IMG/VR virus record: IMGVR_UViG_3300021511_000003
Span: 62,001 to 126,000 of that record
DNA length: 64,000 nucleotides
Reading direction: 5' to 3' (one strand)
Below the pieces are notes generated by a model that was not told where the DNA came from, searched no databases, and worked only from the letters and a program-made list of their open reading frames with translations. How positions within the stretch are numbered: position 1 is the stretch's first letter; each line of letters starts with the position of its first letter. This document shows, in pieces, positions 4,176 through 63,483 of this stretch. The position numbers were made by a program, and so were the translations under genes.

Positions 4176-4301
4176 TCCTGAAAGTAGAAAATGTAATAGG
4201 TACTTGATAAAGTAAGAATTGAACTTACCGTCTTTTGCGTATAAGGCAAATACCCCACCATTGGGATTTTTTATCTGAAATCACAAATAAGTCTTTCAGG
4301 A
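4176..4301 (-). ncRNA. Scaffold RNA module carrying a tRNA-Ile(UAU)-like cloverleaf (4206-4275)
   Basis: Outer helix TCCTGAAAG/CTTTCAGGA; inner TGTGAT/ATTACA; insert GATAAA/TTTATC stem, D arm TCCC-AATGGT-GGGG, anticodon arm TTTGC-CTTATAC-GCAAA, T arm GTAAG-TTCAATT-CTTAC; no CCA. Confidence 0.8.
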
Positions 4302-4417: not shown

Positions 4418-4548
4418 CCCGAAGTAGTAAGTGTATTAATTTGTCATACCACAGATGGCGTGGTAGAAGGGACTCGAACCCTATACGTTGCTTTATAAGA
4501 GCAGTGCTGAACCAATCAGCGATCAGAAAATACGTCTAAGTCTTCGGG
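4418..4548 (-). ncRNA. Scaffold RNA module carrying a circularly permuted tRNA-Ile(UAU)-like domain
   Basis: Outer CCCGAAG/CTTCGGG; inner GTATT/AATAC; D arm GCTGA-TTGGT-TCAGC, anticodon arm TGCT-CTTATAA-AGCA, T arm AGGG-TTCGAGT-CCCT, then CTACCAC-G-CCA-TCT-GTGGTA. Confidence 0.8.
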
Positions 4549-5572: not shown

Positions 5573-8500
5573 TTACCTCGTTAACATTAATGATATAAAA
5601 TATGAATTTAATAAATCTTTTGCTGGAGATATTTTTGGTTCTTTATAACCAGCATTGCCATTTTGAATAATCTCTGCCATTATTTTATCTCTTGTTATAT
5701 AATCATCAGATAATGGACCCATAAATTCAGCTAAAACATGTGGACAATTATATGAAATAAAAGAATAAGTATCAAGTTCACCCAGTCTTTGACCTCCATC
5801 ACGTTTTTTTCCACTTGTAGGTTGTGATGTTTTACCTGTTGTTGGACCGGTACCACGTGCATATATTTTCGCTTCGCCAAGATGTTCGAGTTTTGACATA
5901 TACATATAACCAACAGCAACTTCAAAATGGGTTTTAGTATTATATTTAGGCAAGAAAAGTTTATATTTTGTTTTCAAGCCTAATACTTTCAATGATTTTT
6001 TAATCTCAGTATGACCGGGTGCTTTAAATGGTGGTATAATAATTGGATAAAAACCAGTCTTTTTAACCTGGTCAATCATTTTTACATATTGTGTTGTTGT
6101 CAAACTTGATAAATTTCTAACAAGATTTTCTGTTGCTTTTTTATTTGGTGACATATCAAGATTTACAAATACTTGTTTTATGAGTGCAATTGTTTTTGGT
6201 TTTGTCATTGTTGGTAATCGTTTACCTAATTCTCTTGCCATCAATCCACAATACATTTCATATAACTGACCCATATTCATTCTACTTAAAAGACCGAGAG
6301 GATTTAAAATTGTTTCAATGATATCACCGTTAGGAAGTCTTGGCATTAATTCATCGTTTTCAATTAGTGAGATGATTCCCTTATTGCCATACCTATTCGC
6401 TAATTTATCACCAAGTCCAACTCGTAATTCCTGTTCAATTCTAAATCTTACTAATACTCCTTTGATTGTTTCACCTTTGACCGTAAACGATTCTTTTGCT
6501 GGTTTCATTGATTTAAGATTTGTTTTTGTAATCAACTCTTTTAATTGTGGAAATAGTTCTTCATCAACATTAGAATAAACTTCAATATCAACAATTTTTC
6601 CACCAGGACTCTTTTTAATAAATTGTCCAGTAAACATATCAGTTGTTTCATCATCATCGAAACCAATAATATCTTCAATATCACCAAGAGTCTTTCTTAA
6701 TAATGGTTTTCCTTTTTCAATTTCATCACCAATTTCTGCAATATATAAAAGCCTATCATTAGGAGCAATTAATATTTCTTCTTCAATACCATGTAATGAA
6801 GTCAATTTATCCTGTTCTACAACTGATTTACTAATAACTGCACCATCTTCAAAATTATATCCATCATATGGCATAAGAGCGCATAATAACGGTCTTCCAA
6901 GTGAAATTGATCCATTAGACATACATGCACCTTCTGCAATAACATCACCCTGTTTGACGGTTTCACCCACCTTAATCAAAGGGTTAAATACACTTAATGT
7001 ATTTTTTCCAGAACCAGATTTTAAATGAACCGGTGTTATATCAATTATCTTTTTTGTTTTACCACATTGAATTGTTATTAAATCCTTATGAACAGAAGAA
7101 ATTTTACCATTACAAGGAGATTTTTTCACAAAGTTTTTTGATAAAACACCTGTTAATATTGATTCATATCCAGATTGAACAACAGGGGGTTGTGGATTTC
7201 TTAAAGGCAACATTTGTTTTGCCTGATTTGAAAGCATAATAACCCTTGCACCATCTGTATTTTCAAGGAATGGAATCATTGATGTAGTCGTTGAAAGCAT
7301 TCCACTTCCTTCATTATCTGATATATCTTTTGTTGTAAATAAACCTCGTGATGACGATATCAATGCGTCTATGGTTAACTGTTGAACAATTCCAATATTG
7401 TCACTCTCGGATGTATCAAGAGGATCAAGATTTCCAAAATATGAATTATGTAAATTACGAGCATCATTATGAATAGCTCTTTTATCAGGAATACCTCCAA
7501 CCTTTTTACCAGCAGGAGACACTCTTGTCATAGTTGACATTTCTTCAAGAGGATTTGCGTATTCCATATCAACAACTAATTCAGTCATTAAAAAATCACT
7601 TAATACTTTAGTTGGTACTATTGTTAATTTTGCTTCTGTATTGCCTGATAAAACTTGCTCTTTATATACTGTGTAAGCTGCAAGAATTTGTTTTTGTGCT
7701 AAATGGACAAGAACTTCTGAATTTCTAATTCGTTGATTACTAATATCATTTCTTGCAATATAAAACCCATCAACAACTTTTTCTGTCATATATTTCATAA
7801 TCATTTCAAGATCAGTTGGTAATTGTTTATTTAATAATACTTGCTTAGCAACAGGATCAACAATATTTTGAAGATTTGAACTAATAAGAAATGTTGAGTT
7901 TAATCTACCTGATAATTGAATTATTAAATCTTCAAAATATTTATGTGAAGCAAATTCGGCATCACTTTTATATTGTTGTACTTTACCATGAATGAATGAT
8001 TGGCATAGTTGTTTTTGTAAATCTGTTTGGACGTTTTGGAATATAATATATTTTTCGTTGTTAATTTTACATGAGAATTTTTCACTTGGTTTATTATCTG
8101 ACAATATATATTTAATATTATATTTTTTTAAGGTTTCATCAAAACCAAAACTAAACGCAAGCAAAAATATTAATGGCATTTTATAAGACATGAAAGCTTC
8201 AAGATATTTTTCACGTCTTAGCTGTTTAACATATATTCTAAAAACAGAATATGAGCTTTCAAATCTTGATTCACCTGGTGATGGAAATGTAATTGGATTT
8301 TGTACAATTTGATTGATCAAACATTTTTGTTTACCATTCAGTCGAAACACTCCAGTATCAGGATCAATTTTTGGCAACTCCATTTTTATTTCATGTTTGT
8401 TTCCAAATTCATCTGACATATTAATTGTAGCAATTGATAAATCAGATCTCATTACTTCACCCATTCTTTGAGGTTTATCAGCAAGTGTAATCCCTTCAAA

Positions 8501-9649
8501 TTTCATAGGAATCTCTTTTGATTCTAAAACTTTGAATGAGTTTGTTAAATCCTTTTTCAGATTTGTTTTGAAATCAACCTGGCGTTTTTCATATACATGT
8601 TCAGGAGATTTATTATCAACCATTATTTGTGGACTATATACCTGAACTCTTGGGTCAGTACTTAGATTTACAGTTTTAACAGGTTTTAACAGTTCACTTG
8701 AAAAGTTTTTATCTATTGCTTTTAATGCAACTTTCTTTCTTGATTTTGGTATCTGTCTTGCAATAGCGGTTGATTTAGATTTATCGCCACTGACTCCATA
8801 CAATATCGCTGAAGTTGCTATATCTCTCACATCATCGCCTGACGCATCACCAGAGGTTATTTTAATAATATCATCTGGATTTGTTTTTAAATATTTTTCA
8901 ACTGCGCCAGCAACATTTTTTATATTTTTTGGTTCAATATCAGTTGAAATAGCTTTGCTTATAATTCTTGCAGCCTTTTTTGTTTGGTTTTCAACCTCTT
9001 CTTCTGCTGGAATACTTTTAATAGTTCTTATATAGTGGGTCAATCTTGCGAATTTATATTCATTATCTTTCACGAGTAAACGATATTTTGATGAACTAGC
9101 ATCTAAATAATTTATTATCATATGATCAAATAAAAAGTTTCCATTTTTCATATCTCGTATAACAGGAAATATTTTTTTGTCAATAAATGGATTGATTTCT
9201 TTTGAAATATCAACAGAATAAAATAATATCTTTTGATAATTATCTGGAAAAGCATCTGACATTTGCTTCAAAATATTTGTAATAAAAAATCCAGCTCTTT
9301 GTCTATACGTAGTAGGCTTATAAACTGTATCAATAGCATTTGTATATTGTGATAAATCTACAATAACATTCTTCCCTTGCGGTATATTTTGTTGCATTGT
9401 ATAAGGAATTAATCCAAGAGCTTTATACATTTTTACAAATTGTGCTGTCATTCTTGTACGTGGAACCTGTGTAACTGGACTTGCAACAATACGAAAATCA
9501 ACTCTTTTTAAATTCAATTTTAGGTAATCTGTAATGAAATTAGAATTTTCAGAAAAATATATAATAAGATATGGTTCTTTTGGATTTTGCGGAAACCTCA
9601 CACCATCCGTTACATGCGTATATTGTTTCCATGATTTAAATTGAATCAC
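5573..9649 (-). CDS. rpoB: DNA-directed RNA polymerase beta subunit (phage type, N-terminal extension)
   Basis: GVFRLNG, YFGNLDPLDTSESDNIG, GYNFED, GDKLANRYGNKGII, LNPLGLLSRMNMGQLYE, KLEH, QPTSGKKRDGGQRLGELD. Confidence 0.95.
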   Translation of the reverse strand: MIQFKSWKQYTHVTDGVRFPQNPKEPYLIIYFSENSNFITDYLKLNLKRVDFRIVASPVTQVPRTRMTAQFVKMYKALGLIPYTMQQNIPQGKNVIVDLSQYTNAIDTVYKPTTYRQRAGFFITNILKQMSDAFPDNYQKILFYSVDISKEINPFIDKKIFPVIRDMKNGNFLFDHMIINYLDASSSKYRLLVKDNEYKFARLTHYIRTIKSIPAEEEVENQTKKAARIISKAISTDIEPKNIKNVAGAVEKYLKTNPDDIIKITSGDASGDDVRDIATSAILYGVSGDKSKSTAIARQIPKSRKKVALKAIDKNFSSELLKPVKTVNLSTDPRVQVYSPQIMVDNKSPEHVYEKRQVDFKTNLKKDLTNSFKVLESKEIPMKFEGITLADKPQRMGEVMRSDLSIATINMSDEFGNKHEIKMELPKIDPDTGVFRLNGKQKCLINQIVQNPITFPSPGESRFESSYSVFRIYVKQLRREKYLEAFMSYKMPLIFLLAFSFGFDETLKKYNIKYILSDNKPSEKFSCKINNEKYIIFQNVQTDLQKQLCQSFIHGKVQQYKSDAEFASHKYFEDLIIQLSGRLNSTFLISSNLQNIVDPVAKQVLLNKQLPTDLEMIMKYMTEKVVDGFYIARNDISNQRIRNSEVLVHLAQKQILAAYTVYKEQVLSGNTEAKLTIVPTKVLSDFLMTELVVDMEYANPLEEMSTMTRVSPAGKKVGGIPDKRAIHNDARNLHNSYFGNLDPLDTSESDNIGIVQQLTIDALISSSRGLFTTKDISDNEGSGMLSTTTSMIPFLENTDGARVIMLSNQAKQMLPLRNPQPPVVQSGYESILTGVLSKNFVKKSPCNGKISSVHKDLITIQCGKTKKIIDITPVHLKSGSGKNTLSVFNPLIKVGETVKQGDVIAEGACMSNGSISLGRPLLCALMPYDGYNFEDGAVISKSVVEQDKLTSLHGIEEEILIAPNDRLLYIAEIGDEIEKGKPLLRKTLGDIEDIIGFDDDETTDMFTGQFIKKSPGGKIVDIEVYSNVDEELFPQLKELITKTNLKSMKPAKESFTVKGETIKGVLVRFRIEQELRVGLGDKLANRYGNKGIISLIENDELMPRLPNGDIIETILNPLGLLSRMNMGQLYEMYCGLMARELGKRLPTMTKPKTIALIKQVFVNLDMSPNKKATENLVRNLSSLTTTQYVKMIDQVKKTGFYPIIIPPFKAPGHTEIKKSLKVLGLKTKYKLFLPKYNTKTHFEVAVGYMYMSKLEHLGEAKIYARGTGPTTGKTSQPTSGKKRDGGQRLGELDTYSFISYNCPHVLAEFMGPLSDDYITRDKIMAEIIQNGNAGYKEPKISPAKDLLNSYFISLMLTR

Positions 9650-9821
9650 TAGTTTCCCCTCTGCAAATTATATTTGTTAGTTTTCCTGTTGAACATTCAT
9701 TTTGATGACCTTTTTTAATATATTCGGGACAATTACTTGAATGTTTACTATAACACCATTTACCATTTTTAAATTGATAATTAGCTTCTTGACTACAACC
9801 ATAATTGCATAGTTGTATTAT
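9636..9821 (-). pseudogene. Miniature HNH-family remnant: N-terminal Cys motif fused in frame to the C-terminal tail
   Basis: Reads IIQLCNYGCSQEANYQFKNGKWCYSKHSSNCPEYIKKGHQNECSTGKLTNIICRGETSDSI*; ATA at the start position. Confidence 0.75.
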
Positions 9822-12800
9822 TCCTTTTTTTCTTCCACAAGTGTACCAGTAAGGACTTTTTCAAGAACAGATGCTTCCCCAGTTTCATCAGTAATCAATC
9901 CAGTTTTTATAGCTTCGTTGATATTTTCGAAGGCCAGTCCCTGAATAAAACTTGTCTTGAATACAATCTGTTTAATATTAATCATAACAGGATCCCATTT
10001 ACGTCCAAGTCTTGCAGGAATACTCTGATTGGCTCTATCTCTTAATGATTGTGATAATAAAATTTCAATATGAACACTATCCATATCTCTAAGATCACCA
10101 TATATTTTAAATAATTTTAAATATAAATGATTAGCATCTTTATAAATTTCACGCCCTCCAATTAGTCTTTCAACATATTGGATTTGTTTTTTCATTGCTT
10201 CTGTTTCTGTTGGTACTTCTAATATTGTACTATGTTTCTTATAATATAATTTGATTGTTTCTTTATTTTCTTCGATTTCATATATTTGAAATTTAATTGG
10301 ATAATCAAGAATGATATTATAGATTGAATCTGAAAATTCAACTATAGCTACAGAAGCTCTTATAGACAAAATAGTTTTTGTATCATTAAATGTCAAATCT
10401 CCTGATACTGGGTAATCTCCTTTTGAAATTGTAACTGTACAATCATCGTTACATGCCAATACATTATCATTTTGTATTAAAGTCTTTCTTACAATCTTTT
10501 CATCTACAAGAGCATCATTCTGAATAATATCGTCAATGATATTTCTTGAAACAACACTTACTGCACCGCCTGTGTGGAACGTTTTCATAATAGTCTGTGT
10601 TCCAGCTTCACCAATAAGCTGTGCTGCCATTACACCTGCATATGGACTTCGATGACGTTCTAATAGTTTTCCATAACAAGTATGACATAGTTTTGAAGAT
10701 TCACAAAATACGGGTGTTCGTAAATGAATTTGATCTCCAATCTTATAATTTACAGGATTAAATAATTGAGGTTTACCATTTTCAAGAACATAACGACCAT
10801 TCAGTCTAGTTGATAGTTTTTTAGTTAACCTTAGATCAAGAGTCCTTTTTGTTTTACAATCTTGTAGATTTGGATCAATCTCAACACTGTTTAAAACATA
10901 TGCTAATTTTCTTGCCATGTATCCAGTATCTGCAGTATTTAAAACTCTATCAATAATACCACTTCTTGCACCAGACGCTGCTGAAAAATATTGACTATTT
11001 GTTAAACCATCCGAAAACGAACCATCTATTGGAGGTAATACTTTTCCTGTTGGATCAGATACTAAACCTTTAGCAACAAAAATTTGTGTTGGTTGTCCCC
11101 AACCTTTACCTCCACCTGATTCAATTAAATCATAAACACCACTTCCTTTCAAATGTTCTATTAACATTACTTGCATTTTTTTCAATAATACATCGGCTTC
11201 CTCTGTTGATGAATTTTTCAATTGTTTTTTAAGCTCTAAAATTTCAGGTGGTAATTGAATATCATCTAATGTAATACTTGGTGAAATGATTGTTGAAAAT
11301 TTAAATGAAATATCTTTTAATTTTGAAAAAGATTTAATTGCTTGTTCCTGACCATATTTTTTAAGAATTGGAGAAATCATTCCATTAACAACTTTCTTTG
11401 TCACTATATCATTATAAAATGGAGTATCCAATGGAAATACACTATTAAAAAGAGCTTTTCCCATTGTTGTAGTTTTCTTTCTATATACTACAGGAATATA
11501 TGGATCAACAGCATTATCTAAATCTTTTTGTGTTACTGCAATAGGAGGAGTTGTTCTTTTTATATCTTTTGTGATTGTAAAAAGTCCAACACACATTTCT
11601 TTTGAAAGTTCAAAATTTACAGATTTATCATTATCACCACTTTCAGATCTCATCATTTTAGTTTTTGCTTCAAGTTGTGCTTCATTCGTAATTGGATGAA
11701 AAATTGCCATAGTATCACCATCAAAATCAGCATTGAATCCACCAACTTGTAATGTACATAATTGCACTGTATTCCCTTTAATTAAAATTGGATTAAATGC
11801 TCTAATAGATTCAGCATGTAAACAAGGGTCACGTTTTGCCAATACAACACGATTCATCATAGCAACTTCTGTTGCTTCAAATACAATATCATATAGTTCT
11901 TTTGGTATTTTATCTCCACTTTTAATAGACTTGAAAACTTGTTTAACACCATCAACAGAAAGTTCAAATTTTGTAAACTTTTTAACTTCATCTGATAATT
12001 TCTTTTTATCAACCCGACTTGAAAATAAACGATGTAATATAAATGGTTCAAATAAACTAACAGCCATCCGTAATGGTATCCCAATTTCATTTACTTTTAA
12101 ATCTGGACCTGGTGTAATAACGGCACGACCAGAAAAATCTGTACGTTTACCAAGCATTTGTGATCGAATTAAACCACGTTTTTTCTGAATTAATTTTCTA
12201 ATAAAATTGTCATGATTAATAATTGCTTTTTGTAATTCAAAATTCAACAAATCAAATAATGGTCCACTTTTTGCAGCACTCCTTATCTGATGTGCTCGGC
12301 GTATAGTTGTGATATAATAATCATTTAAAGGATCAATAATCCACATTCCATTTTCATCTTGATATGCATCTCGTTGAATTGGTGGTATTACTGGTAAAAC
12401 ATCTAAAAATAACGTATTGTTTTCATATGATTCTTTTATCTTTTTAATGAATTTATCTCGAGTATCAGACCCCCCTCTAAATTTGATTTTTGGAAGTAAC
12501 TTCATAAATGATGAAATTCCAGTAACACCTCTTGAATCTTTTTGAAGAAGCCCTTTTGAATCAACTGAAAAGGTTTCTTGCGCAGATATAAATAATTCAA
12601 TTTGTCTATCAAGTTGAATAAGAAGTATATATGCAGATGGGTGAATAACATAAGCATTTAAATTAATATATGAAAATGTTTTCTTTCGTTCAGTAGATTC
12701 TTCGGATCCAAAAATTATTTCAGAAAAAAGACCATCAGGATGAAACTCCCCAGGTTTGGAAAATAATTCCGTTGTTGTTACAGGGGTCAATCCTTTTTTG

Positions 12801-12829
12801 AAATTATTTATATTCAGAAAATTAATCAT
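9818..12829 (-). CDS. rpoC: DNA-directed RNA polymerase beta' subunit
   Basis: GLFSEIIFG, LPVIPP, LGKRTDFSGRAVITP, catalytic FNADFDGDTM, TADTGYMARKL, GEAGTQTIMKTFHTGG. Confidence 0.97.
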   Translation of the reverse strand: MINFLNINNFKKGLTPVTTTELFSKPGEFHPDGLFSEIIFGSEESTERKKTFSYINLNAYVIHPSAYILLIQLDRQIELFISAQETFSVDSKGLLQKDSRGVTGISSFMKLLPKIKFRGGSDTRDKFIKKIKESYENNTLFLDVLPVIPPIQRDAYQDENGMWIIDPLNDYYITTIRRAHQIRSAAKSGPLFDLLNFELQKAIINHDNFIRKLIQKKRGLIRSQMLGKRTDFSGRAVITPGPDLKVNEIGIPLRMAVSLFEPFILHRLFSSRVDKKKLSDEVKKFTKFELSVDGVKQVFKSIKSGDKIPKELYDIVFEATEVAMMNRVVLAKRDPCLHAESIRAFNPILIKGNTVQLCTLQVGGFNADFDGDTMAIFHPITNEAQLEAKTKMMRSESGDNDKSVNFELSKEMCVGLFTITKDIKRTTPPIAVTQKDLDNAVDPYIPVVYRKKTTTMGKALFNSVFPLDTPFYNDIVTKKVVNGMISPILKKYGQEQAIKSFSKLKDISFKFSTIISPSITLDDIQLPPEILELKKQLKNSSTEEADVLLKKMQVMLIEHLKGSGVYDLIESGGGKGWGQPTQIFVAKGLVSDPTGKVLPPIDGSFSDGLTNSQYFSAASGARSGIIDRVLNTADTGYMARKLAYVLNSVEIDPNLQDCKTKRTLDLRLTKKLSTRLNGRYVLENGKPQLFNPVNYKIGDQIHLRTPVFCESSKLCHTCYGKLLERHRSPYAGVMAAQLIGEAGTQTIMKTFHTGGAVSVVSRNIIDDIIQNDALVDEKIVRKTLIQNDNVLACNDDCTVTISKGDYPVSGDLTFNDTKTILSIRASVAIVEFSDSIYNIILDYPIKFQIYEIEENKETIKLYYKKHSTILEVPTETEAMKKQIQYVERLIGGREIYKDANHLYLKLFKIYGDLRDMDSVHIEILLSQSLRDRANQSIPARLGRKWDPVMINIKQIVFKTSFIQGLAFENINEAIKTGLITDETGEASVLEKVLTGTLVEEKKE

Positions 12830-12981
12830 TATACGCATATCCTTTGTGCCAAATTACCTGTAGAACATTCATCTTTATGACCATATTTATAGTGACATCT
12901 TTCACATACAGACCATGCTAAATCTGGATCTAACTTAAAAAAATGGGTTGCTTCTTTGCCACATCCATCACAAATAATCAT
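12829..12981 (-). CDS. 50-aa miniature HNH-family derivative
   Basis: MIICDGCGKEATHFFKLDPDLAWSVCERCHYKYGHKDECSTGNLAQRICV*; TAATG overlaps at both ends. Confidence 0.75.
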   Translation of the reverse strand: MIICDGCGKEATHFFKLDPDLAWSVCERCHYKYGHKDECSTGNLAQRICV

Positions 12982-13448
12982 TATTTATCATCAATTGCAT
13001 TTGTTTTATTAATATCAAGATAAGATTTAATTTTTTTGAACATCCTCGTTACTTGTGCTTTTTTTGCAGCTGTGGATGCCGGTTTGATCACAGTTTTTGA
13101 AAGGACATTATGTCTATGATTTAATTGATTCAAAATACCTTGAAGTGTATTAGTATCAAATTTTCCTTTTGGATCATTCATTAATCTTTGAACAAGTTTT
13201 AATGCAACTGCAATTACTTTTTTATCCTCCATACCCATACGATTACAGATGGGTATAAGATATGGAGAAGTGTTTCTACCAATTGGTAACAACTTTAGAA
13301 AACATTTTGGCTTATCACCGTATAATCTATCTCTCAAATCCTTCTTTAGTAAATACGATAAACTATCTTCGGGATTAATTAAATCATTTGCCTTTCTAAT
13401 AAGTTCCGAAAGATGTTTTATTTCTTCATTTAATTGGTCGCTCATCAT
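12981..13448 (-). CDS. Hypothetical protein, first gene of the RNAP operon
   Basis: 155-aa ORF, SD GGAGG. Confidence 0.75.
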   Translation of the reverse strand: MMSDQLNEEIKHLSELIRKANDLINPEDSLSYLLKKDLRDRLYGDKPKCFLKLLPIGRNTSPYLIPICNRMGMEDKKVIAVALKLVQRLMNDPKGKFDTNTLQGILNQLNHRHNVLSKTVIKPASTAAKKAQVTRMFKKIKSYLDINKTNAIDDK

Positions 13449-13486
13449 TTAACCTCCGATAACTGGATGTAATATCTTATTTTATA

Positions 13487-13494
13487 TTTGTTCT
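13487..13494 (-). promoter_or_regulatory. Putative phage promoter class B (RGAACAWA)
   Basis: AGAACAAA about 40 nt upstream of the start; the motif recurs before many genes. Confidence 0.45.
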
Positions 13495-13510
13495 TAAAAT
13501 ATAATGGCAA

Positions 13511-13545
13511 AAAATATGTGGGGATAAAATTTCCCCACATATTTT
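13511..13545. terminator. Rho-independent terminator-like hairpin
   Basis: AAAATATGTGGGG/CCCCACATATTTT stem with T/A tails. Confidence 0.75.
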
Positions 13546-13627
13546 ATAACTTTTTATCTTTGGGTGTCGAATTTACTGAATCTGTATTTTTAATGCTTCC
13601 GACCCGGAAACGTAATATTATTGGGTT

Positions 13628-13954
13628 TCACATACTTTTAAAGCGTATTACATAAATATTTGTTTCTGGAAATTTATGCCAGGTTTTTACATCCACCAGT
13701 AACATTTCAGAAATTTGTTTGTCTTTTTTATCAAGTAATTCCAAAATAATTTCGTCATTGGTATTAACTTTTTTTGTTTGATCATATTTTGTTATTTTAA
13801 TTCCATCGACAACAATACTATATTGTGTTTTATATAAAAATTCTTTTATAGATAAACTATTTTTATAATCTTCGTTTAATTCTATGCTACATGAAGGAAG
13901 AATAAAAATAAAAAACAGTAGTGAATAAAATATTTTTCTCATTCGCATCTCCAT
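13628..13954 (-). CDS. Putative lipoprotein
   Basis: Hydrophobic signal peptide ending LPSC. Confidence 0.6.
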   Translation of the reverse strand: MEMRMRKIFYSLLFFIFILPSCSIELNEDYKNSLSIKEFLYKTQYSIVVDGIKITKYDQTKKVNTNDEIILELLDKKDKQISEMLLVDVKTWHKFPETNIYVIRFKSM

Positions 13955-15399
13955 TAAAAATCAGCATTCATCAATTTTGTCATTTCATCAATTTCTTTTT
14001 TCATACCTCCTGAAAAGTATGCTGTAAAGAATTTGATCATACCATTTTCGATTTTTGAAAGAGGAATACCACCTAATCGTTTTCCTGTTAAAATATCACA
14101 AAAATCAACTCGAGAAACTCTACCGATAAAATGACATAATAATGTATGAGGTAATATCTTTGTAGTAAATCCAAAGAAATTTTGTGTTTCTTGTTGTGTT
14201 TTCAAATATTCATGCACAGCTTTAATTTTATATGTTGTACTCATTGATGGGCTTTTCATTGGGTAAAAGTTTAATAAAGTAAATAAGTCTTTATAGTCTG
14301 TACCGAATACTTGTCTAAATAAAACTTGGATATAAACTGCAATCACCGCTGTATGCTCAGGGGAAAGTGTTCTGAAATGATGGAACGGTATATGAGTCAT
14401 TTGTGATAATATTGGAAATACTAATGTTTCTGCCAATGGAGAAATAAAATTAATTTCTGATGCTCGTTCATGGAATGATATAATGAATTCGTCATCATCA
14501 ACTTTTTCAGTTGACATAGTTGATTGCCTTTGAAGTAATTCATATATTTTTTCATAAGCAATGCTTTTTAATCTTCCAAGAGTATCATTATAACTATAAG
14601 TCTTTAAGTTATCTGTATTAATACCTTGAATATCTTCTGTTGAAATACTATCATCATAAACAATAGAACCTTTATAAACTGATCGTAAAAACCATTTAAC
14701 TGATTCATCAATAACTCCAACAAAATAAGTAATTGGATTTTTATCTATTTCACAAAGAATCAGAATATTATTCATAATGAAATTGAAAATTTCAATAACA
14801 TGAACTCCAATATCTTTTCCTTGCACATTCTTGATATATTCCCACATAAATCTATCTGTTAGATTATATCTGAATGTTTTTGTTTTGATAACATCATAAA
14901 TCTTTCTAATAATATCTGTTTCAACAATATCTGAAGCAAATTGGTTATAAACTTCTCGATGTAGTTGTGCTCCCAATTTCAATTTTTCATTGTTTGAAAT
15001 CACTGAATAAATTTTAAGATAGCTTGATAGTCTAATAATTTGTTCAATTTCATCTGGTTTAAAAAGTATGGAGTTTTTCTTGACCTTTGTCATATCAACA
15101 AACTGACTATAATCAAAAGTTAAAGAATCCATATAACTATCAACATAATTTTTAATTTGAGGAATACTATCGACTACAGCTTTTGATCGCAGATTTTCAT
15201 CATGGCAATCAGTTAAAAAATTAATAAACCAGTTGCTGAATCCTTCTACGTTATGTTCAGCAACTCTCTCGATGAATTTGGTCACAATAAAATATTTATT
15301 AGTGACTGAAGAAGGTGAGAGAAAGAGTTTTATTGGTTCAACATCATCATCTACTACAACTGACCATACTTTTGGTCCATTCTGCTCAATTCGTAACAA
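13954..15399 (-). CDS. Hypothetical protein (~480 aa)
   Basis: Long ORF; SD AAGGAGG favours a TTG start near 15399 (ORF track gives 15432). Confidence 0.75.
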   Translation of the reverse strand: MLRIEQNGPKVWSVVVDDDVEPIKLFLSPSSVTNKYFIVTKFIERVAEHNVEGFSNWFINFLTDCHDENLRSKAVVDSIPQIKNYVDSYMDSLTFDYSQFVDMTKVKKNSILFKPDEIEQIIRLSSYLKIYSVISNNEKLKLGAQLHREVYNQFASDIVETDIIRKIYDVIKTKTFRYNLTDRFMWEYIKNVQGKDIGVHVIEIFNFIMNNILILCEIDKNPITYFVGVIDESVKWFLRSVYKGSIVYDDSISTEDIQGINTDNLKTYSYNDTLGRLKSIAYEKIYELLQRQSTMSTEKVDDDEFIISFHERASEINFISPLAETLVFPILSQMTHIPFHHFRTLSPEHTAVIAVYIQVLFRQVFGTDYKDLFTLLNFYPMKSPSMSTTYKIKAVHEYLKTQQETQNFFGFTTKILPHTLLCHFIGRVSRVDFCDILTGKRLGGIPLSKIENGMIKFFTAYFSGGMKKEIDEMTKLMNADF

Positions 15400-15511
15400 A
15401 ATAAATTGACCTCCTTTGATGTTGTGAGACATTCATTGATAAAAAATACCAATGAATACCTCATGGACCTTTATGAGTTGTGGTTATAAAGATCCAATTC
15501 AAAAAATAACG

Positions 15512-15570
15512 AAACACTTATATCTTTCATTAGTTATTAATATATATAGACATGGAATATATAAGTGTTT
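15512..15570 (-). promoter_or_regulatory. Class A promoter motif (15536-15549) flanked by a perfect 12-bp inverted repeat
   Basis: AAACACTTATAT (15512-15523) and ATATAAGTGTTT (15559-15570). Confidence 0.55.
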
Positions 15571-15590
15571 AAGTTCTCATATTCAAAGAT

Positions 15591-16502
15591 TTATATTTTA
15601 CACACCAAATCTTTTAAGACTTGCTCAAATATTTCTTTTGGTACTGTTGTTGTGCCTGATTGTGTTACTACATAAGCAGCGCATTTATTTGCAAGAATGG
15701 CTGCTTCGTGTATAGAATAATTCATTGATAAACATAAACCCATAACAGCCACAACCGTATCACCGGCACCTGAAACATTGTAAACTTCAACGGGTTCTGA
15801 CATAATTGAATATTCTTTATTATTCAACTTATTATATAAAATCATTCCATGTTTGCCTTTTGTTTCAAGAATAAATTTTACATTTTTTAATGAATATTTA
15901 GATGATAGTTTCATGATTTTCCATTCTTTTTCATTGGGTGTAATCATGTAAGCATCATTATATAAAAAGCCATTAATTGGTTTTGGATCAACAATGATTT
16001 TTGTATTCAGAGTTTTAAGAAATTCCATTAGTTCTTTTGTAATCATTCCTTTTGCATAATCCGAAACTATAATAACATCATATACTTTTCTACAATCTTT
16101 AAGGAAAACTTCAATTGCTCTTTTTGAATCAATTTTCGAGATTGTTTCTCTATCAACTCTTAACATTTGAACTTTACGGTCATCAGCAATAATTCTTTCT
16201 TTTACAATTGTTTGTTTTGAACCGTATGAACATAAATTCTTTGCGCCTATATTATCCAATTCATTAATTATCAACCCCCCATTGATATCATTCGAAATTG
16301 AGGACATACAATCAACTTGTGCTCCGAGTTCTCTAAGATTTCTACAAACATGGCCACAACCTCCCAAAGTATAATATTCTTCTTTAACGTGAACAACAGG
16401 TACAGGAGCTTCTGGGCATATTCTTTCAACTTTACCTATAATATATTTGTCAAGCATTATATCGCCAACAACTAAAACTTTCACATGACCAGTTTCTTTC
16501 AT
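15591..16502 (-). CDS. hldE: D-glycero-D-manno-heptose-7-phosphate kinase (HldE/RfaE domain I, PfkB family)
   Basis: VLVVGDIMLDKY, ERICPEAPVPVV, SDYAKG, VDPK, ITPNEKE, VYNVSGAGDTV. Confidence 0.9.
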   Translation of the reverse strand: MKETGHVKVLVVGDIMLDKYIIGKVERICPEAPVPVVHVKEEYYTLGGCGHVCRNLRELGAQVDCMSSISNDINGGLIINELDNIGAKNLCSYGSKQTIVKERIIADDRKVQMLRVDRETISKIDSKRAIEVFLKDCRKVYDVIIVSDYAKGMITKELMEFLKTLNTKIIVDPKPINGFLYNDAYMITPNEKEWKIMKLSSKYSLKNVKFILETKGKHGMILYNKLNNKEYSIMSEPVEVYNVSGAGDTVVAVMGLCLSMNYSIHEAAILANKCAAYVVTQSGTTTVPKEIFEQVLKDLVCKI

Positions 16503-16566
16503 ATACACCGCCTTTTTAAAATTTTCGTGGCAAAAAAGAGTATCGAACTCATTTTTTGTAAAGTGT

Positions 16567-16645
16567 GAGAGAGGTAATTCCGCTATCCCATAAGGACCGG
16601 TGATTTTGCGTCCTAACCTTGCGGTTAGTTTGCCTTTTTCTCTCT
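16567..16645 (-). promoter_or_regulatory. c-di-GMP-I (GEMM-I) riboswitch aptamer
   Basis: GAGAG-AAAAA-GGCAAAC-TAACC-GCAA-GGTTAG-GACGCAAA-ATCACC-GGTCC-TTAT-GGGATAGC-GGAATTACC-TCTCTC matches the class I consensus, with P1 GAGAG/CTCTC and a GNRA loop. Confidence 0.88.
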
Positions 16646-16683
16646 TAATTTTACATTATGTTCCAATTGTAAATTGTATAATC

Positions 16684-17421
16684 TTACAGTTCATTCAACA
16701 TTTTCTGAATTTCGGCATTTACGAAAGCATTACCTTGCAACCAAGGACGATCTTCTGGACCAGCGGATCCACCGGATATTCCGGTACCACCAGTTGCAAT
16801 TGATGTATCAGAGGCCTTGGCATATGAAAAACCAATACCCCATCCGAATGCTTCAATTTTACGATGGGCACCTTCAGCTTTAAATACAAGCACATTGGCA
16901 CCGTTTTGCATGGCTTTCAGAGCCATTGCTCCAACTAATTGTACTGAGTTGGTTTTCCCGTTTTTGGCAGTACCGTTGATAAAAGCGACATGCGTTCCGG
17001 TGTTTTTAATTCCCTTAATACGATCAGGGTCGATTACAAGCAGGATACGACGATCATTTTTTTCACGTCCATTAACGCATTTTTCGGGGTTCACTTCAGC
17101 ATATGTAATACGGGTCTCCCCCCATTTAGCCATATTTTCAAGGGCACCTTCGGAAAAGACTTTTCCAAATTCGAGAATGTTTTTGATTGTAACGAAATCG
17201 CCATCCGGAGTCGGTGTAGTGAACCATCCGGGTTGACCAGGAATCGGAACGGAACCGGCATTCGGGAAGGCACGGTCAGTAGCTTCGTATGTATTTATAC
17301 TGTGATCATCAATGGATGCAGTAACATCATCGACATTTGCTTCGGATGTTGTATCCGCCATTGCGGGTATATAAAATGCAACAAAAACAAGGCTCATCAT
17401 AATTACAATAATCTTTTTCAT
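16684..17421 (-). CDS. Secreted protein of unknown function
   Basis: Signal peptide MKKIIVIMMSLVFVAFYIPAMA; higher GC than its flanks. Confidence 0.75.
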   Translation of the reverse strand: MKKIIVIMMSLVFVAFYIPAMADTTSEANVDDVTASIDDHSINTYEATDRAFPNAGSVPIPGQPGWFTTPTPDGDFVTIKNILEFGKVFSEGALENMAKWGETRITYAEVNPEKCVNGREKNDRRILLVIDPDRIKGIKNTGTHVAFINGTAKNGKTNSVQLVGAMALKAMQNGANVLVFKAEGAHRKIEAFGWGIGFSYAKASDTSIATGGTGISGGSAGPEDRPWLQGNAFVNAEIQKMLNEL

Positions 17422-62196: not shown

Positions 62197-63483
62197 ATGT
62201 TAGTTGAGTCGAAACGTGGAATTTGGAGAGAAGACACAATTCAAAGAGATATATTACCAATACCCTCACAAATTATGCGACAATTTGGTATCTCTGCCGA
62301 AAATGCAAAACATGTATTGAAATTAGAAGATTTAAGAAAAACACCACCTAATATTATTATTGCTGAAGCAAAAAAGACTTTTGGTTTTATGCAAAATTAT
62401 TTCAGTAGACAACAATTAAAAAAGAAACAAAAATATGTAATGGGACTTGGTGTTTTCCAACAACTTTTTAAAGATAGAAAAAATAAAAAAATTAAGTTGT
62501 TGAAAGCTACAGTACCAAAATTTAAAAATGTTTATAAGCCATATATTGGTCAGGATATAACTGACAAAACTATTCTTGTATTCCGAACTGGAGGAATAGG
62601 TGATCTTCTATTTATTCAACCCAATCTAATATATTTAAAAAACAAATATCCCACATGCAAAATCAAATTTGCCTGTGGTCCGCAATATCAACCTATGGTA
62701 AATAATTGGCCTTGTGTTGATGAAGTTTTAGAGTTACCATTCTTATTTAAACATATGATAAAGTCAGATTATCATATGTTATTTGAAGGTGTTATTGAAA
62801 GGTGTGAAGAAGCAAGAACGGTAAATTCTTACCATCTTTTTACACGATGGCTTGGGTTAAATTTACCAGATAATTTACTTATCCCAAGACAAGATCCGAA
62901 AACAGAACTTATTGATAAATGTTTTAATATATTAACAGAATGGGGGATTGTGAATAAATCATTTGTATTGATGCAGTTACGTGCAAGTTCTCCCATTAGA
63001 ACTCCAACACATGAATTTTGGGTTAAAATTATAGACGAACTGAATGAGAGAGGTCACTATGTTGTTTTAACTGATAGCCCAAGACAATCAGAAAAAATTG
63101 ATGAATTTATTAAAATGTTGAAAAAACCAGAAATGATATTTAACTTTTGTAAACATTCAAAATCTATTGCTTATACAATTGCTCTTACTAAATTAAGTAA
63201 ATGTGTTTACGCTACAGATTCAGCATTGATGCATATTGCTGCATCTATGGATATAAAATGTTTTGGCGTATTCGGGCCATTCCCTGGTTATATTAGATTG
63301 AGTACATATCCTTATGCCTCTTGGGTTGATGCAAAAAGAAAGTGCTCACCATGCTGGATTCATTCACATAAACCTTGTCCACAATCGAAAGATGGTTATA
63401 GTCCCTGTTATGATGAACTTGTAAATACTGATGATAAATTGAAAAAAGTCATTGATAAATTTGAGGATTTATTAAACAGATGA
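62197..63483 (+). CDS. GT9-family (heptosyltransferase-like) glycosyltransferase
   Basis: RTGGIGDL, TDSALMHIAA, FGP, CSPC....CP. Confidence 0.85.
   Translation: MLVESKRGIWREDTIQRDILPIPSQIMRQFGISAENAKHVLKLEDLRKTPPNIIIAEAKKTFGFMQNYFSRQQLKKKQKYVMGLGVFQQLFKDRKNKKIKLLKATVPKFKNVYKPYIGQDITDKTILVFRTGGIGDLLFIQPNLIYLKNKYPTCKIKFACGPQYQPMVNNWPCVDEVLELPFLFKHMIKSDYHMLFEGVIERCEEARTVNSYHLFTRWLGLNLPDNLLIPRQDPKTELIDKCFNILTEWGIVNKSFVLMQLRASSPIRTPTHEFWVKIIDELNERGHYVVLTDSPRQSEKIDEFIKMLKKPEMIFNFCKHSKSIAYTIALTKLSKCVYATDSALMHIAASMDIKCFGVFGPFPGYIRLSTYPYASWVDAKRKCSPCWIHSHKPCPQSKDGYSPCYDELVNTDDKLKKVIDKFEDLLNR

What the first reader, a model, noticed from the sequence alone, without database searches (positions are those of the whole stretch)
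16502..16664. Phage-encoded c-di-GMP-I riboswitch in front of a heptose kinase gene
Seen: a complete class I aptamer at 16567-16645 and a class B promoter-like motif just upstream (16657-16664). Downstream is a hairpin with a U run (16531-16558) ending in TTTGCC, which can alternatively pair with the aptamer's GGCAAA, then the RBS of hldE. Established: G at the Vc2 G20-equivalent position indicates c-di-GMP rather than 3',3'-cGAMP preference, and riboswitches are rare in phages. Inference: the phage ties ADP-heptose supply or surface modification to the host's biofilm state, or a terminated ~120-nt RNA acts as a cyclic-dinucleotide sponge.
Basis: partly seen in the sequence, partly recalled or inferred. 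Interest (0 to 1): 0.78.

Follow-up and report, generated by a model that had tools for sequence, protein, structure and literature searches.

The report
Jumbo-phage c-di-GMP riboswitch before heptose kinase
A large environmental phage carries a genuine, canonical c-di-GMP-sensing RNA switch in front of its own heptose-sugar kinase gene, so it probably tunes a sugar-nucleotide pathway to the host's second messenger; this is a known switch type in an unusual place.

Summary
On the minus strand, 16643-16569 matches Rfam c-di-GMP-I (61.7 bits, cut-off 35) and the c-di-GMP-I-GGC variant model (65.2, cut-off 59). At the ligand-contact positions it has the canonical letters G/A/C, not the variant's G after GACGC.

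Six homologous aptamers in related jumbo phages keep the fold, with compensatory changes in 6 pairs. The GGAACATAAT motif upstream recurs before genes genome-wide, so it is promoter-like.

The downstream gene is a stand-alone HldA-like heptose-7-phosphate kinase, not bifunctional HldE. The phage also encodes an HldC-like adenylyltransferase and a GT9 heptosyltransferase-like protein elsewhere.

New point: aptamer-less relatives have the same leader (motif, A-run, hairpin, U-run, often GCC, RBS). The hairpin and the TTTGCC are therefore ancestral, not riboswitch-specific, and the proposed GGCAAA/TTTGCC switch is not supported.

In two relatives the terminator stem overlaps the P1 3' strand, which is an ON-switch design. 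In this window the hairpin is weak (-7.9 kcal/mol) and independent of P1, so the switching logic is unresolved.

Verdict: a new member of a known class in a rare context (phage with its own RNA polymerase), moderately interesting. The sponge idea is untested.

The parts
16655..16664 (-). Promoter-like motif GGAACATAAT (phage gene-start motif, core GAACA[AT]AAT). The predicted transcript start lies a few nt downstream, just 5' of P1.
   Evidence: The core occurs 36 times in the genome. 13 copies lie within 200 nt upstream of RBS+ATG+ORF, against 4.5 +/- 1.9 for random positions. It sits at the same position in relatives with and without the aptamer.
16569..16643 (-). c-di-GMP-I aptamer. P1 is 16644-16640 paired with 16573-16569. 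The first hairpin has a GCAA tetraloop (16633-16608). The second hairpin is short and UUAU-capped (16605-16576). Ligand-contact equivalents are G16634, A16607 and C16574.
   Evidence: RF01051 61.7 bits (GA 35) and RF03167 65.2 bits (GA 59). Across 6 homologous phage aptamers, 94.9% of cells are paired and 6 pairs show compensatory change. Sliding the partners by 1-3 columns gives 32-46% paired.
16532..16557 (-). Leader hairpin with A-run and U-run. The A-run is 16557-16552. The GAGU:ACUC stem is 16550-16547 paired with 16541-16538. The U-run is 16537-16532, followed by GCC at 16531-16529. It looks like a terminator but is weak.
   Evidence: dG -7.9 kcal/mol, z -3.5. It fails the generic terminator scan. 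It forms regardless of the state of P1. A homologous but stronger hairpin with a U-run is present in aptamer-less relatives.
16508..16514 (-). Ribosome-binding site AAGGCGG of the kinase gene (conserved as GAAAGGYGG in relatives).
   Evidence: Sequence. Conserved upstream of the ATG in relatives.
15591..16502 (-). [quoted passage not shown]
   Evidence: PF00294 87.1 bits. TIGR02198 rfaE_dom_I 249.9 bits (cut-off 345). The closest solved structure is 4E84, a heptose 7-phosphate kinase, E 9e-39. The PfkB GG dipeptide and the SGAGD motif are invariant in 24 homologues.
16684..17421 (-). Upstream gene (245 aa, N-terminal hydrophobic signal-like segment, no family match). Its stop is 20 nt before the promoter-like motif.
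   Evidence: No Pfam, NCBIfam or PHROG hit. There is a 68% identical orthologue directly upstream of the kinase in aptamer-less L223.
62197..63483 (+). GT9 (ADP-heptose heptosyltransferase-like) protein, a likely consumer of the pathway's product. It is not adjacent to the riboswitch.
   Evidence: PF01075 40.1 bits (cut-off 22). TIGR02195 43 bits, below its cut-off.

Best explanation
A canonical c-di-GMP-I riboswitch aptamer sits in the 5' leader of a jumbo phage's own heptose-7-phosphate kinase gene (HldA-like). It lies between a phage promoter-like motif and an older, pre-existing leader hairpin with a U-run.

Shown:
- The aptamer is real, has the c-di-GMP-type contact letters, and is conserved with compensatory changes in at least five related phages.
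- It is always in the leader of the kinase, or of an epimerase-kinase pair.
- It is present or absent between the same orthologous genes in different relatives.

Inferred:
- Host c-di-GMP binding closes P1 and changes how much full-length kinase mRNA is made. ADP-heptose supply, together with the phage's HldC-like and GT9-like genes, would then be tied to the host's c-di-GMP level.
- In relatives L445/L218 and L447 the terminator's 5' arm is the P1 3' strand, so ligand should prevent termination (ON switch).
- In this window the hairpin is weak and does not overlap P1. The direction and the level of control (transcription or translation) are therefore unresolved. ON by homology is my preferred guess.
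For: - Rfam scores are above the gathering thresholds for both class I models, and there is a single hit in the 223-kb genome.
- The contact letters are G16634, A16607 and C16574.
- Homologous aptamers occur in L217/L218/L445, L447, L448 and L226. L240 has a degenerate copy and L234 a truncated one.
- Covariation: 6 pairs with changes on both sides and 94.9% paired, against 32-46% when the partners are slid.
- The promoter-like motif is enriched before genes.
- The kinase is assigned by TIGR02198, PDB 4E84 and conserved catalytic motifs.
- Pathway partners are in the same genome: an HldC-like gene (179.7 bits, cut-off 181.5) and a GT9-like gene.
- In L226 the aptamer precedes an NDP-sugar epimerase/dehydratase followed by the kinase.
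- P1 and the terminator overlap in L445/L218 and L447.
Against: - No ligand binding, transcript or expression data exist. No RNA runs were listed.
- In this window the hairpin forms with probability 0.93-0.99 whether P1 is enforced or blocked, and no stable anti-terminator was found.
- The hairpin has only 4 core pairs and fails a generic terminator scan.
- It is not known whether the RNA polymerase that uses this promoter, host or phage-encoded, responds to intrinsic terminators.
- Most relatives (at least 9 loci) do without the aptamer, so it is dispensable.
- GmhA and GmhB were not found in the 71%-complete record, so the phage pathway is partial.
Confidence: 0.65

Rival explanations
1. The promoter-to-U-run unit makes a short RNA of about 115 nt that is essentially just the aptamer. 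This RNA would act in trans as a c-di-GMP sponge or decoy that lowers free c-di-GMP in the infected cell. Control of the kinase would be secondary.
For: In this window the hairpin and U-run form irrespective of P1, which would give a constitutive short transcript if the hairpin terminates. The promoter-like motif lies directly upstream.
Against: The hairpin is weaker here (-7.9 kcal/mol) than in aptamer-less relatives (-9.6 to -33.6), the opposite of what a dedicated sRNA terminator would need. Relatives L445 and L447 have a classical cis switch design. The aptamer is always in a sugar-gene leader. No abundance data exist.
Confidence: 0.1
2. It belongs to the c-di-GMP-I-GGC variant class, Rfam's top hit, and senses a ligand other than c-di-GMP.
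For: RF03167 outscores RF01051 (65.2 against 61.7 bits) and passes its own higher threshold.
Against: - The uppercase G that follows GACGC in the RF03167 consensus is A here, as in the RF01051 consensus. The junction before the P1 3' strand reads AC, not GC.
- Homologous aptamers in the same clade flip between the two models: L226 goes to RF01051, and L218 scores 59.2 against a threshold of 59.
- Another A-carrying viral aptamer, L116, also goes to RF03167.
- The preference therefore seems to reflect the short second hairpin, not the binding site.
Confidence: 0.06
3. The aptamer is a passenger or decaying relic acquired from host DNA and has no regulatory role in this phage.
For: Its distribution is patchy and most relatives lack it. 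L240 has a degenerate copy: 46.4 bits, below threshold, with core changes and an opposite-strand ORF downstream. In this window the platform shows no P1 coupling.
Against: Junction letters are strictly conserved and helices vary in a compensatory way across phages whose kinases are only 62-70% identical and whose flanks have diverged. The sequence is identical in contigs from other metagenomes, and the one strain variant seen has its insertions in the platform, not in the covered part of the aptamer.
Confidence: 0.12
4. It senses 3',3'-cGAMP or another defence-system cyclic dinucleotide (for example CBASS signals) rather than housekeeping c-di-GMP.
For: It is in a phage, and class I aptamers can be retuned by a single change at the G20 position (established knowledge).
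Against: The G20-equivalent is G in all six homologues, with A47 and C92 equivalents intact. The regulated genes are sugar-nucleotide genes, not counter-defence genes.
Confidence: 0.04

Closest known systems
c-di-GMP-I (GEMM-I) riboswitch, Rfam RF01051, e.g. Vibrio cholerae Vc2
   Same: It has the three-helix junction and the GGCAAAC...GGACGCAAA core. It has a GNRA tetraloop on the first hairpin. The G20, A47 and C92 equivalents are present. It lies in a 5' leader followed by a hairpin and U-run.
   Different: The second hairpin is short and UUAU-capped, without the canonical 11-nt tetraloop receptor insert. It is encoded by a jumbo phage that has its own multisubunit RNA polymerase. It regulates a heptose kinase. 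In this window the expression platform is not visibly coupled to P1.
c-di-GMP-I riboswitches in Clostridioides difficile PhiCD119-like prophages (Cdi1_4 and Cdi1_5; Sudarsan 2008, as cited in PMC5473149 and PMC3649979)
   Same: The same riboswitch class, carried by phage DNA.
   Different: Those are in temperate prophages of a Firmicute, in the lysis module. This one is in an uncultured genome of more than 220 kb from vent and sediment metagenomes (CheckV puts the 223-kb record at 71% complete), next to the RNA polymerase genes and in front of a sugar kinase.
c-di-GMP-I-GGC variant, Rfam RF03167
   Same: It gives the best Rfam score (65.2 bits). The overall architecture is shared, including the short second hairpin.
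   Different: The variant's conserved G after GACGC is A here, and the GC before the P1 3' strand is AC here. A defining feature was tested and not met.
c-AMP-GMP (3',3'-cGAMP) GEMM-Ib riboswitches of Geobacter
   Same: The same scaffold.
   Different: Those carry A at the G20 position (established knowledge). Here it is G in all homologues.
HldA / HldE N-terminal domain heptose-7-phosphate kinases (e.g. PDB 4E84)
   Same: PfkB fold, best family TIGR02198, conserved GG and GAGD motifs. HldC-like and GT9-like partners are in the same genome.
   Different: The score is below NCBIfam's equivalog cut-off. It is a stand-alone phage gene in a conserved block with the RNA polymerase genes. GmhA and GmhB were not found. 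The substrate is untested.

Membership tests
c-di-GMP-I riboswitch (RF01051) | Covariance-model score at or above the curated gathering score | tested here: met
   61.7 bits against 35. Homologue L226 scores 57.6 bits.
c-di-GMP-I riboswitch (RF01051) | P1 plus two hairpins at a three-way junction, supported by covariation | tested here: met
   Six homologues, 94.9% of cells paired, 6 pairs with compensatory change. Slid controls give 32-46% paired.
c-di-GMP-I riboswitch (RF01051) | Ligand-contact nucleotides equivalent to Vc2 G20, A47 and C92 | tested here: met
   G16634, A16607 and C16574, placed by alignment to the model consensus. The assignment of these positions to Vc2 numbering rests on my knowledge of the crystal structures.
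c-di-GMP-I riboswitch (RF01051) | GNRA tetraloop docking into a receptor in the other hairpin | tested here: inconclusive
   A GCAA tetraloop is present. The canonical CUAAG...UAUG receptor insert of the RF01051 consensus is deleted. A helical C-G receptor is possible but cannot be tested here.
c-di-GMP-I riboswitch (RF01051) | Binds c-di-GMP and changes expression of the downstream gene | not testable with these tools
No RNA runs were listed.
c-di-GMP-I riboswitch (RF01051) | Expression platform mutually exclusive with P1 | tested here: not met
   In this window the hairpin forms with P 0.93-0.99 whether P1 is enforced or blocked. The feature is met in relatives L445/L218 and L447.
c-di-GMP-I-GGC variant (RF03167) | Score at or above the gathering score | tested here: met
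   65.2 bits against 59.
c-di-GMP-I-GGC variant (RF03167) | Variant letters at the binding-site positions (conserved G directly after GACGC, and GC before the P1 3' strand) | tested here: not met
   The window has A after GACGC and AC before the P1 3' strand (alignment). So do all homologues. The paper that defines the variant was not held, so the definition is read from the Rfam consensus.
HldA / HldE kinase domain (TIGR02198) | Equivalog-level score | tested here: not met
   249.9 bits against a cut-off of 345. It is still by far the best family; the next is ribokinase at 53.9 bits.
HldA / HldE kinase domain (TIGR02198) | PfkB fold with catalytic GAGD and GG motifs, and a solved heptose kinase as the closest structure | tested here: met
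   PF00294. G47, G48 and S244-G245-A246-G247-D248 are conserved in 24 homologues. 4E84 matches at E 9e-39.
ADP-heptose pathway (GmhA, HldA, GmhB, HldC, HldD plus heptosyltransferase) | The other pathway genes are present in the same genome | tested here: inconclusive
   HldC-like (179.7 bits against 181.5) and GT9-like genes are present. SIS_2/GmhA and the GmhB-type HAD were not found. The SDR present is UDP-sulfoquinovose-synthase-like, not HldD. The record is only 71% complete.

The most novel reading that the evidence does not exclude
A lytic-type jumbo phage with its own multisubunit RNA polymerase reads the host's c-di-GMP directly through an RNA switch. It uses this to gate production of ADP-heptose for a phage-directed glycosylation, of the host envelope or of phage components. 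The switch arose by insertion of an aptamer into a pre-existing promoter-proximal hairpin/U-run leader. The clade would then preserve 'before', 'after' and 'rewired' stages of riboswitch evolution: aptamer-less leaders, aptamer plus uncoupled hairpin as here, and aptamer with a P1-overlapping terminator.
Probability: 0.3. Interest if true: 0.7.

Novelty: new member of a known kind. Interest (0 to 1): 0.5.

Why it matters
Riboswitches are reported to be rare in phages. A 2017 survey cites only two c-di-GMP-I examples, both in C. difficile prophages (PMC5473149).

This one sits in an uncultured jumbo phage that encodes its own RNA polymerase beta and beta' subunits. It controls a sugar-nucleotide gene. 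That would be a direct RNA-level link between a host lifestyle signal (c-di-GMP: sessile or motile) and a phage auxiliary pathway.

The clade offers a natural comparison: the same promoter, leader and kinase with and without the aptamer, and with two different platform designs. This could make the birth and wiring of a riboswitch experimentally tractable. It could also test whether riboswitch terminators work with phage RNA polymerases.

It is still a known aptamer class. 'Rare in phages' may therefore be overstated.

Tried and rejected
- Megablast of the locus against GenBank phages found no match.
- A kinase-based scan of IMG/VR found only relatives at 26-30% identity.
- A clade-specific 17-mer (GAGAGAAAAAGGCAAAC) scanned in viral contigs and genome contigs gave 133 loci, none with the rest of the aptamer, so these were chance matches.
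- A loose core pattern in IMG/VR gave mostly chance matches. Fixing the gap at 14 nt and requiring the hairpin left 38 true-looking aptamers.
- The paper that defines the GGC and UAU variants could not be read. The three papers that mention the name only list it.
- I looked for an anti-terminator in this window by constrained folding and found none. The candidates CUCA:UGAG (4 bp, about 0 kcal/mol) and GGCAAA:UUUGCC (transcribed too late, and ancestral) were rejected.
- An RBS-sequestering pairing (CACCG:CGGUG) is not conserved in L226 and was dropped.
- I asked whether TTTTTGCC is a general terminator ending in this phage. It is not: only 2 of 16 copies follow a hairpin.
- No RNA-seq runs were listed.
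- A kinase tree meant to count gains and losses of the aptamer came out as an unresolved star. At least 2 changes are needed on the ML tree, and a single origin is not excluded.

Full report
**What is there**

All genes around the finding are on the minus strand. Read 5' to 3' on that strand, the 181-nt spacer between a 245-aa gene (stop at 16684) and a 303-aa gene (ATG at 16502) contains:

- GGAACATAAT at 16664-16655.
- A match to class I c-di-GMP aptamers at 16643-16569.
- An A-run, a 4-bp stem and a U-run at 16557-16532, followed by GCC.
- An AU-rich stretch, then AAGGCGG at 16514-16508 and the ATG.

Rfam's gathering-threshold scan of the whole window returns RF03167 (c-di-GMP-I-GGC) at 65.2 bits (threshold 59, E 3.7e-13). 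A separate search with RF01051 (c-di-GMP-I) gives 61.7 bits against a threshold of 35. It is the only such match in the 223-kb record.

**Which class**

The two Rfam consensus sequences differ in the junctions at one strongly conserved letter. RF03167 has G directly after GACGC, and an uppercase GC before the P1 3' strand. RF01051 has A after GACGC.

The window has A at 16607 and AC at 16575-16574, with G at 16634 before the G-C pair that opens the first hairpin. From my knowledge of the Vc2 structures, these are the equivalents of A47, A91/C92 and G20. The binding-site letters are therefore canonical for c-di-GMP. They are neither the GGC variant's nor the A20 of cGAMP-specific relatives.

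The preference for RF03167 seems to come from the short second hairpin, which lacks the receptor insert of RF01051:

- Homologous aptamers of the same clade flip between the models. L218 goes to RF03167 at 59.2 bits and L226 to RF01051 at 57.6 bits.
- An unrelated A-carrying viral aptamer, L116, also goes to RF03167.

I could not read the paper that defines the variant, so this membership test rests on the Rfam consensus.

**The organism**

The window is bases 62001-126000 of a 223-kb IMG/VR virus record that CheckV estimates to be 71% complete. The same sequence occurs in hydrothermal-vent and marine-sediment metagenomes.

The window encodes full-length RNA polymerase beta (5573-9649) and beta' (9818-12838) homologues, a ribonucleotide reductase and a UvsX-like recombinase. 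It also has two tRNA matches. GenBank phages hold nothing similar at the DNA level.

**The regulated gene**

The 303-aa product is a PfkB-family kinase. Its best family by far is TIGR02198, the kinase domain of HldE: 249.9 bits, below the equivalog cut-off of 345, with ribokinase next at 53.9 bits. Its closest solved structure is a heptose-7-phosphate kinase, 4E84, at E 9e-39. The GG and SGAGD motifs are invariant in 24 homologues.

It is kinase-only. An HldC-like adenylyltransferase (140 aa, 179.7 bits against a cut-off of 181.5) is a separate gene at G000:154299-154721. A GT9 heptosyltransferase-like protein lies at window 62197-63483.

GmhA (SIS_2), a GmhB-type phosphatase and GGDEF domains were not found. 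The one SDR enzyme found is UDP-sulfoquinovose-synthase-like rather than HldD. 'Heptose kinase' is therefore well supported as the best assignment, but it is not proven and the phage pathway is partial.

**Relatives**

The kinase has hundreds of metagenomic homologues at 55-71% identity. In the relatives I fetched, the gene order is usually kinase, a 98-aa gene (missing in L221/L222, as in this window), a 480-aa gene, a 153-aa gene, then RNA polymerase beta'. This is a clade of related jumbo phages.

A covariance model built from three aptamers and Rfam scans gave the following.

- Aptamer present:
  - Directly upstream of the kinase in L217/L218/L445, L447 and L448.
  - Upstream of an NDP-sugar epimerase/dehydratase followed by the kinase in L226.
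  - As a degenerate copy in L240 (46.4 bits).
  - As a 3' fragment at the contig end of L234.
- Aptamer absent from at least nine other relatives whose upstream region is available: L219/L229, L221, L223, L227, L228, L230, L243, L244 and L446.

Across the six distinct aptamers, 94.9% of cells pair and six pairs change on both sides. Sliding the 3' partners by 1-3 columns drops pairing to 32-46%. Junction letters are invariant.

L223 has the orthologous upstream gene (68% identity) and kinase (71%), but a 99-nt spacer without an aptamer. The aptamer is therefore an insertion or deletion between the same two genes. A kinase tree is too unresolved to count gains and losses.

**The promoter-like motif**

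The core GAACA[AT]AAT occurs 36 times in the genome. 13 copies are followed within 200 nt by RBS+ATG+ORF, against 4.5 +/- 1.9 for random positions (maximum 10 in 200 trials). Several copies lie only 18-40 nt before a start codon, so the transcript start must be close behind the motif.

The motif is at the same place in the kinase leaders of relatives. Which polymerase uses it is unknown.

**The expression platform: the main correction**

Aptamer-less relatives have the same leader architecture: motif, AAAAA, a G+C-rich stem-loop, U7, then GCC, ACC or GG, then GAAAGGYGG and the ATG. Their hairpin energies run from -9.6 to -33.6 kcal/mol.

The hairpin, the U-run and even the trailing GCC are therefore ancestral leader features, not parts invented for the riboswitch. 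In addition:

- That pairing is never predicted by folding.
- GCC leaves the polymerase only after the termination decision.
- TTTTTGCC is not a general terminator ending in this phage. Only 2 of its 16 copies follow a hairpin, so its presence here reflects shared ancestry of the leader.

Among aptamer-bearing phages there are two designs:

- In L445/L218 and L447 the terminator's 5' arm is the P1 3' strand (CUCUCAUACA...UGUAUGGGAG followed by U8, -15.3 kcal/mol). Enforcing P1 removes the pairs next to the U-run. This is a standard ON switch: c-di-GMP favours read-through.
- In this window and in L226 the hairpin keeps the ancestral A-run/U-run form but is weak (-7.9 and -8.0 kcal/mol). It lies about 10-30 nt beyond P1 and forms with probability 0.93-0.99 whether P1 is enforced or blocked. 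It also fails a generic terminator scan.

I found no convincing anti-terminator or RBS-sequestering alternative for this window. The direction and level of control here are unresolved. ON by homology is a guess.

**Population data**

Contigs from other metagenomes are identical across the leader (X4, X5). One strain variant (X6) has an extra A in the A-run and an extra UC in the CU repeat after P1, and no change in the part of the aptamer it covers.

Several other, much more abundant contigs in the same samples share the 44-nt aptamer core at about 82-84% identity. Class I aptamers are therefore common in that community. No RNA runs were listed.

**Comparison with what is known**

McCown et al. 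2017 state that riboswitches are rarely found in phage genomes. They say the only earlier c-di-GMP-I cases were two in C. difficile prophages (PMC5473149). Those two lie in the lysis module of PhiCD119-like prophages (PMC3649979).

Seven aptamers on five of those loci pass the RF01051 threshold and an eighth (L116) passes RF03167. They include a tandem pair on a 237-kb contig and one on a 145-kb contig. Many IMG/VR records are prophages, so this does not show they are all phage-owned, but the class is not unique to this phage.

No paper in the library links riboswitches with jumbo phages or links phage genes with ADP-heptose synthesis.

**Verdict**

This is a real, canonical c-di-GMP-I aptamer, conserved in a jumbo-phage clade, in the leader of a phage heptose-kinase gene. 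It is a new member of a known class in an uncommon context.

The cis-regulatory reading is the best supported (about 0.65). The sponge, variant-ligand, relic and cGAMP readings are minor rivals.

Noticed in passing
L219:2925-3002, L223:800-880, L230, L243, L244, L227, L228 (kinase leaders of aptamer-less relatives): A strong hairpin with a U7 run sits immediately after the promoter-like motif and before the kinase RBS. It is conserved in architecture but not in sequence across the clade. It looks like a promoter-proximal attenuator or a 5'-terminal stabilising stem whose A-run/U-run pairs flush with the transcript start. Its role is unknown.
   Followed up: partly
L221:2870-2985 (also L222, L231): At the place where other relatives have the aptamer, this phage has a different structured insert of about 110 nt. 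It folds as two hairpins (-37.7 kcal/mol) and ends in UUUUUUUGCC. It has no Rfam match at E<=0.1.
   Followed up: partly
L445:58-69 and 194-204; also L447 and L448: In one aptamer-bearing subclade the U-run is followed by GTTCTAA. In L445, TTAGAACAAAA (the promoter-like motif) and TTTTGTTCTAA form a perfect 11-nt inverted repeat that brackets the whole riboswitch. This may be an antisense copy of the promoter motif or a long-range helix in read-through RNA.
   Followed up: no
L240:1657-1737: A degenerate copy of the aptamer (RF03167 46.4 bits, below threshold). The core is changed to GGCAACC, GGCACGC and UUACUUC. An opposite-strand ORF follows it, about 720 nt upstream of a kinase that is 54% identical.
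   Followed up: partly
window 16597-16640: In four metagenomes, short contigs at up to 13 times the phage's depth share this 44-nt aptamer core with 7-8 differences. Other organisms, possibly the host, carry many similar class I aptamers.
   Followed up: no
window 13511-13545 and 13480-13495 (minus strand): A strong 14-bp terminator hairpin (-19.2 kcal/mol) ends in TTTTTTGCC and is followed by a promoter-like AGAACAAATAT. It lies between the 108-aa and 155-aa genes upstream of RNA polymerase beta'. This probably ends any transcription unit that begins at the riboswitch.
   Followed up: partly
window 15433-15590 (minus strand): The 158-nt spacer after the kinase lacks the 98-aa ORF that most relatives have there. 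It contains 12-nt inverted arms (15570-15559 and 15523-15512) followed by a U-run. This may be a remnant or a second terminator.
   Followed up: no
window 4205-4275 and 4466-4524 (minus strand): Two tRNA matches: 47.5 bits, and a marginal 29.4 bits that appears truncated.
   Followed up: no
window 9818-15432 (minus strand): A block of a 492-aa gene, a 108-aa gene, a 155-aa gene and RNA polymerase beta' follows the kinase. The three small or medium proteins have no family match in Pfam or NCBIfam (PHROGs was run only on the 492-aa one). Homologues of the 492-aa and 155-aa genes keep this order next to beta' in the relatives fetched. They may be polymerase-associated.
   Followed up: no
L139:2275-2462 (IMG/VR contig of 237 kb) and L140:9061-9134 (145 kb): Other large viral contigs carry class I c-di-GMP aptamers above the Rfam threshold. 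One has a tandem pair, and one sits near a tRNA cluster in front of a gene that begins like a signal peptide.
   Followed up: partly
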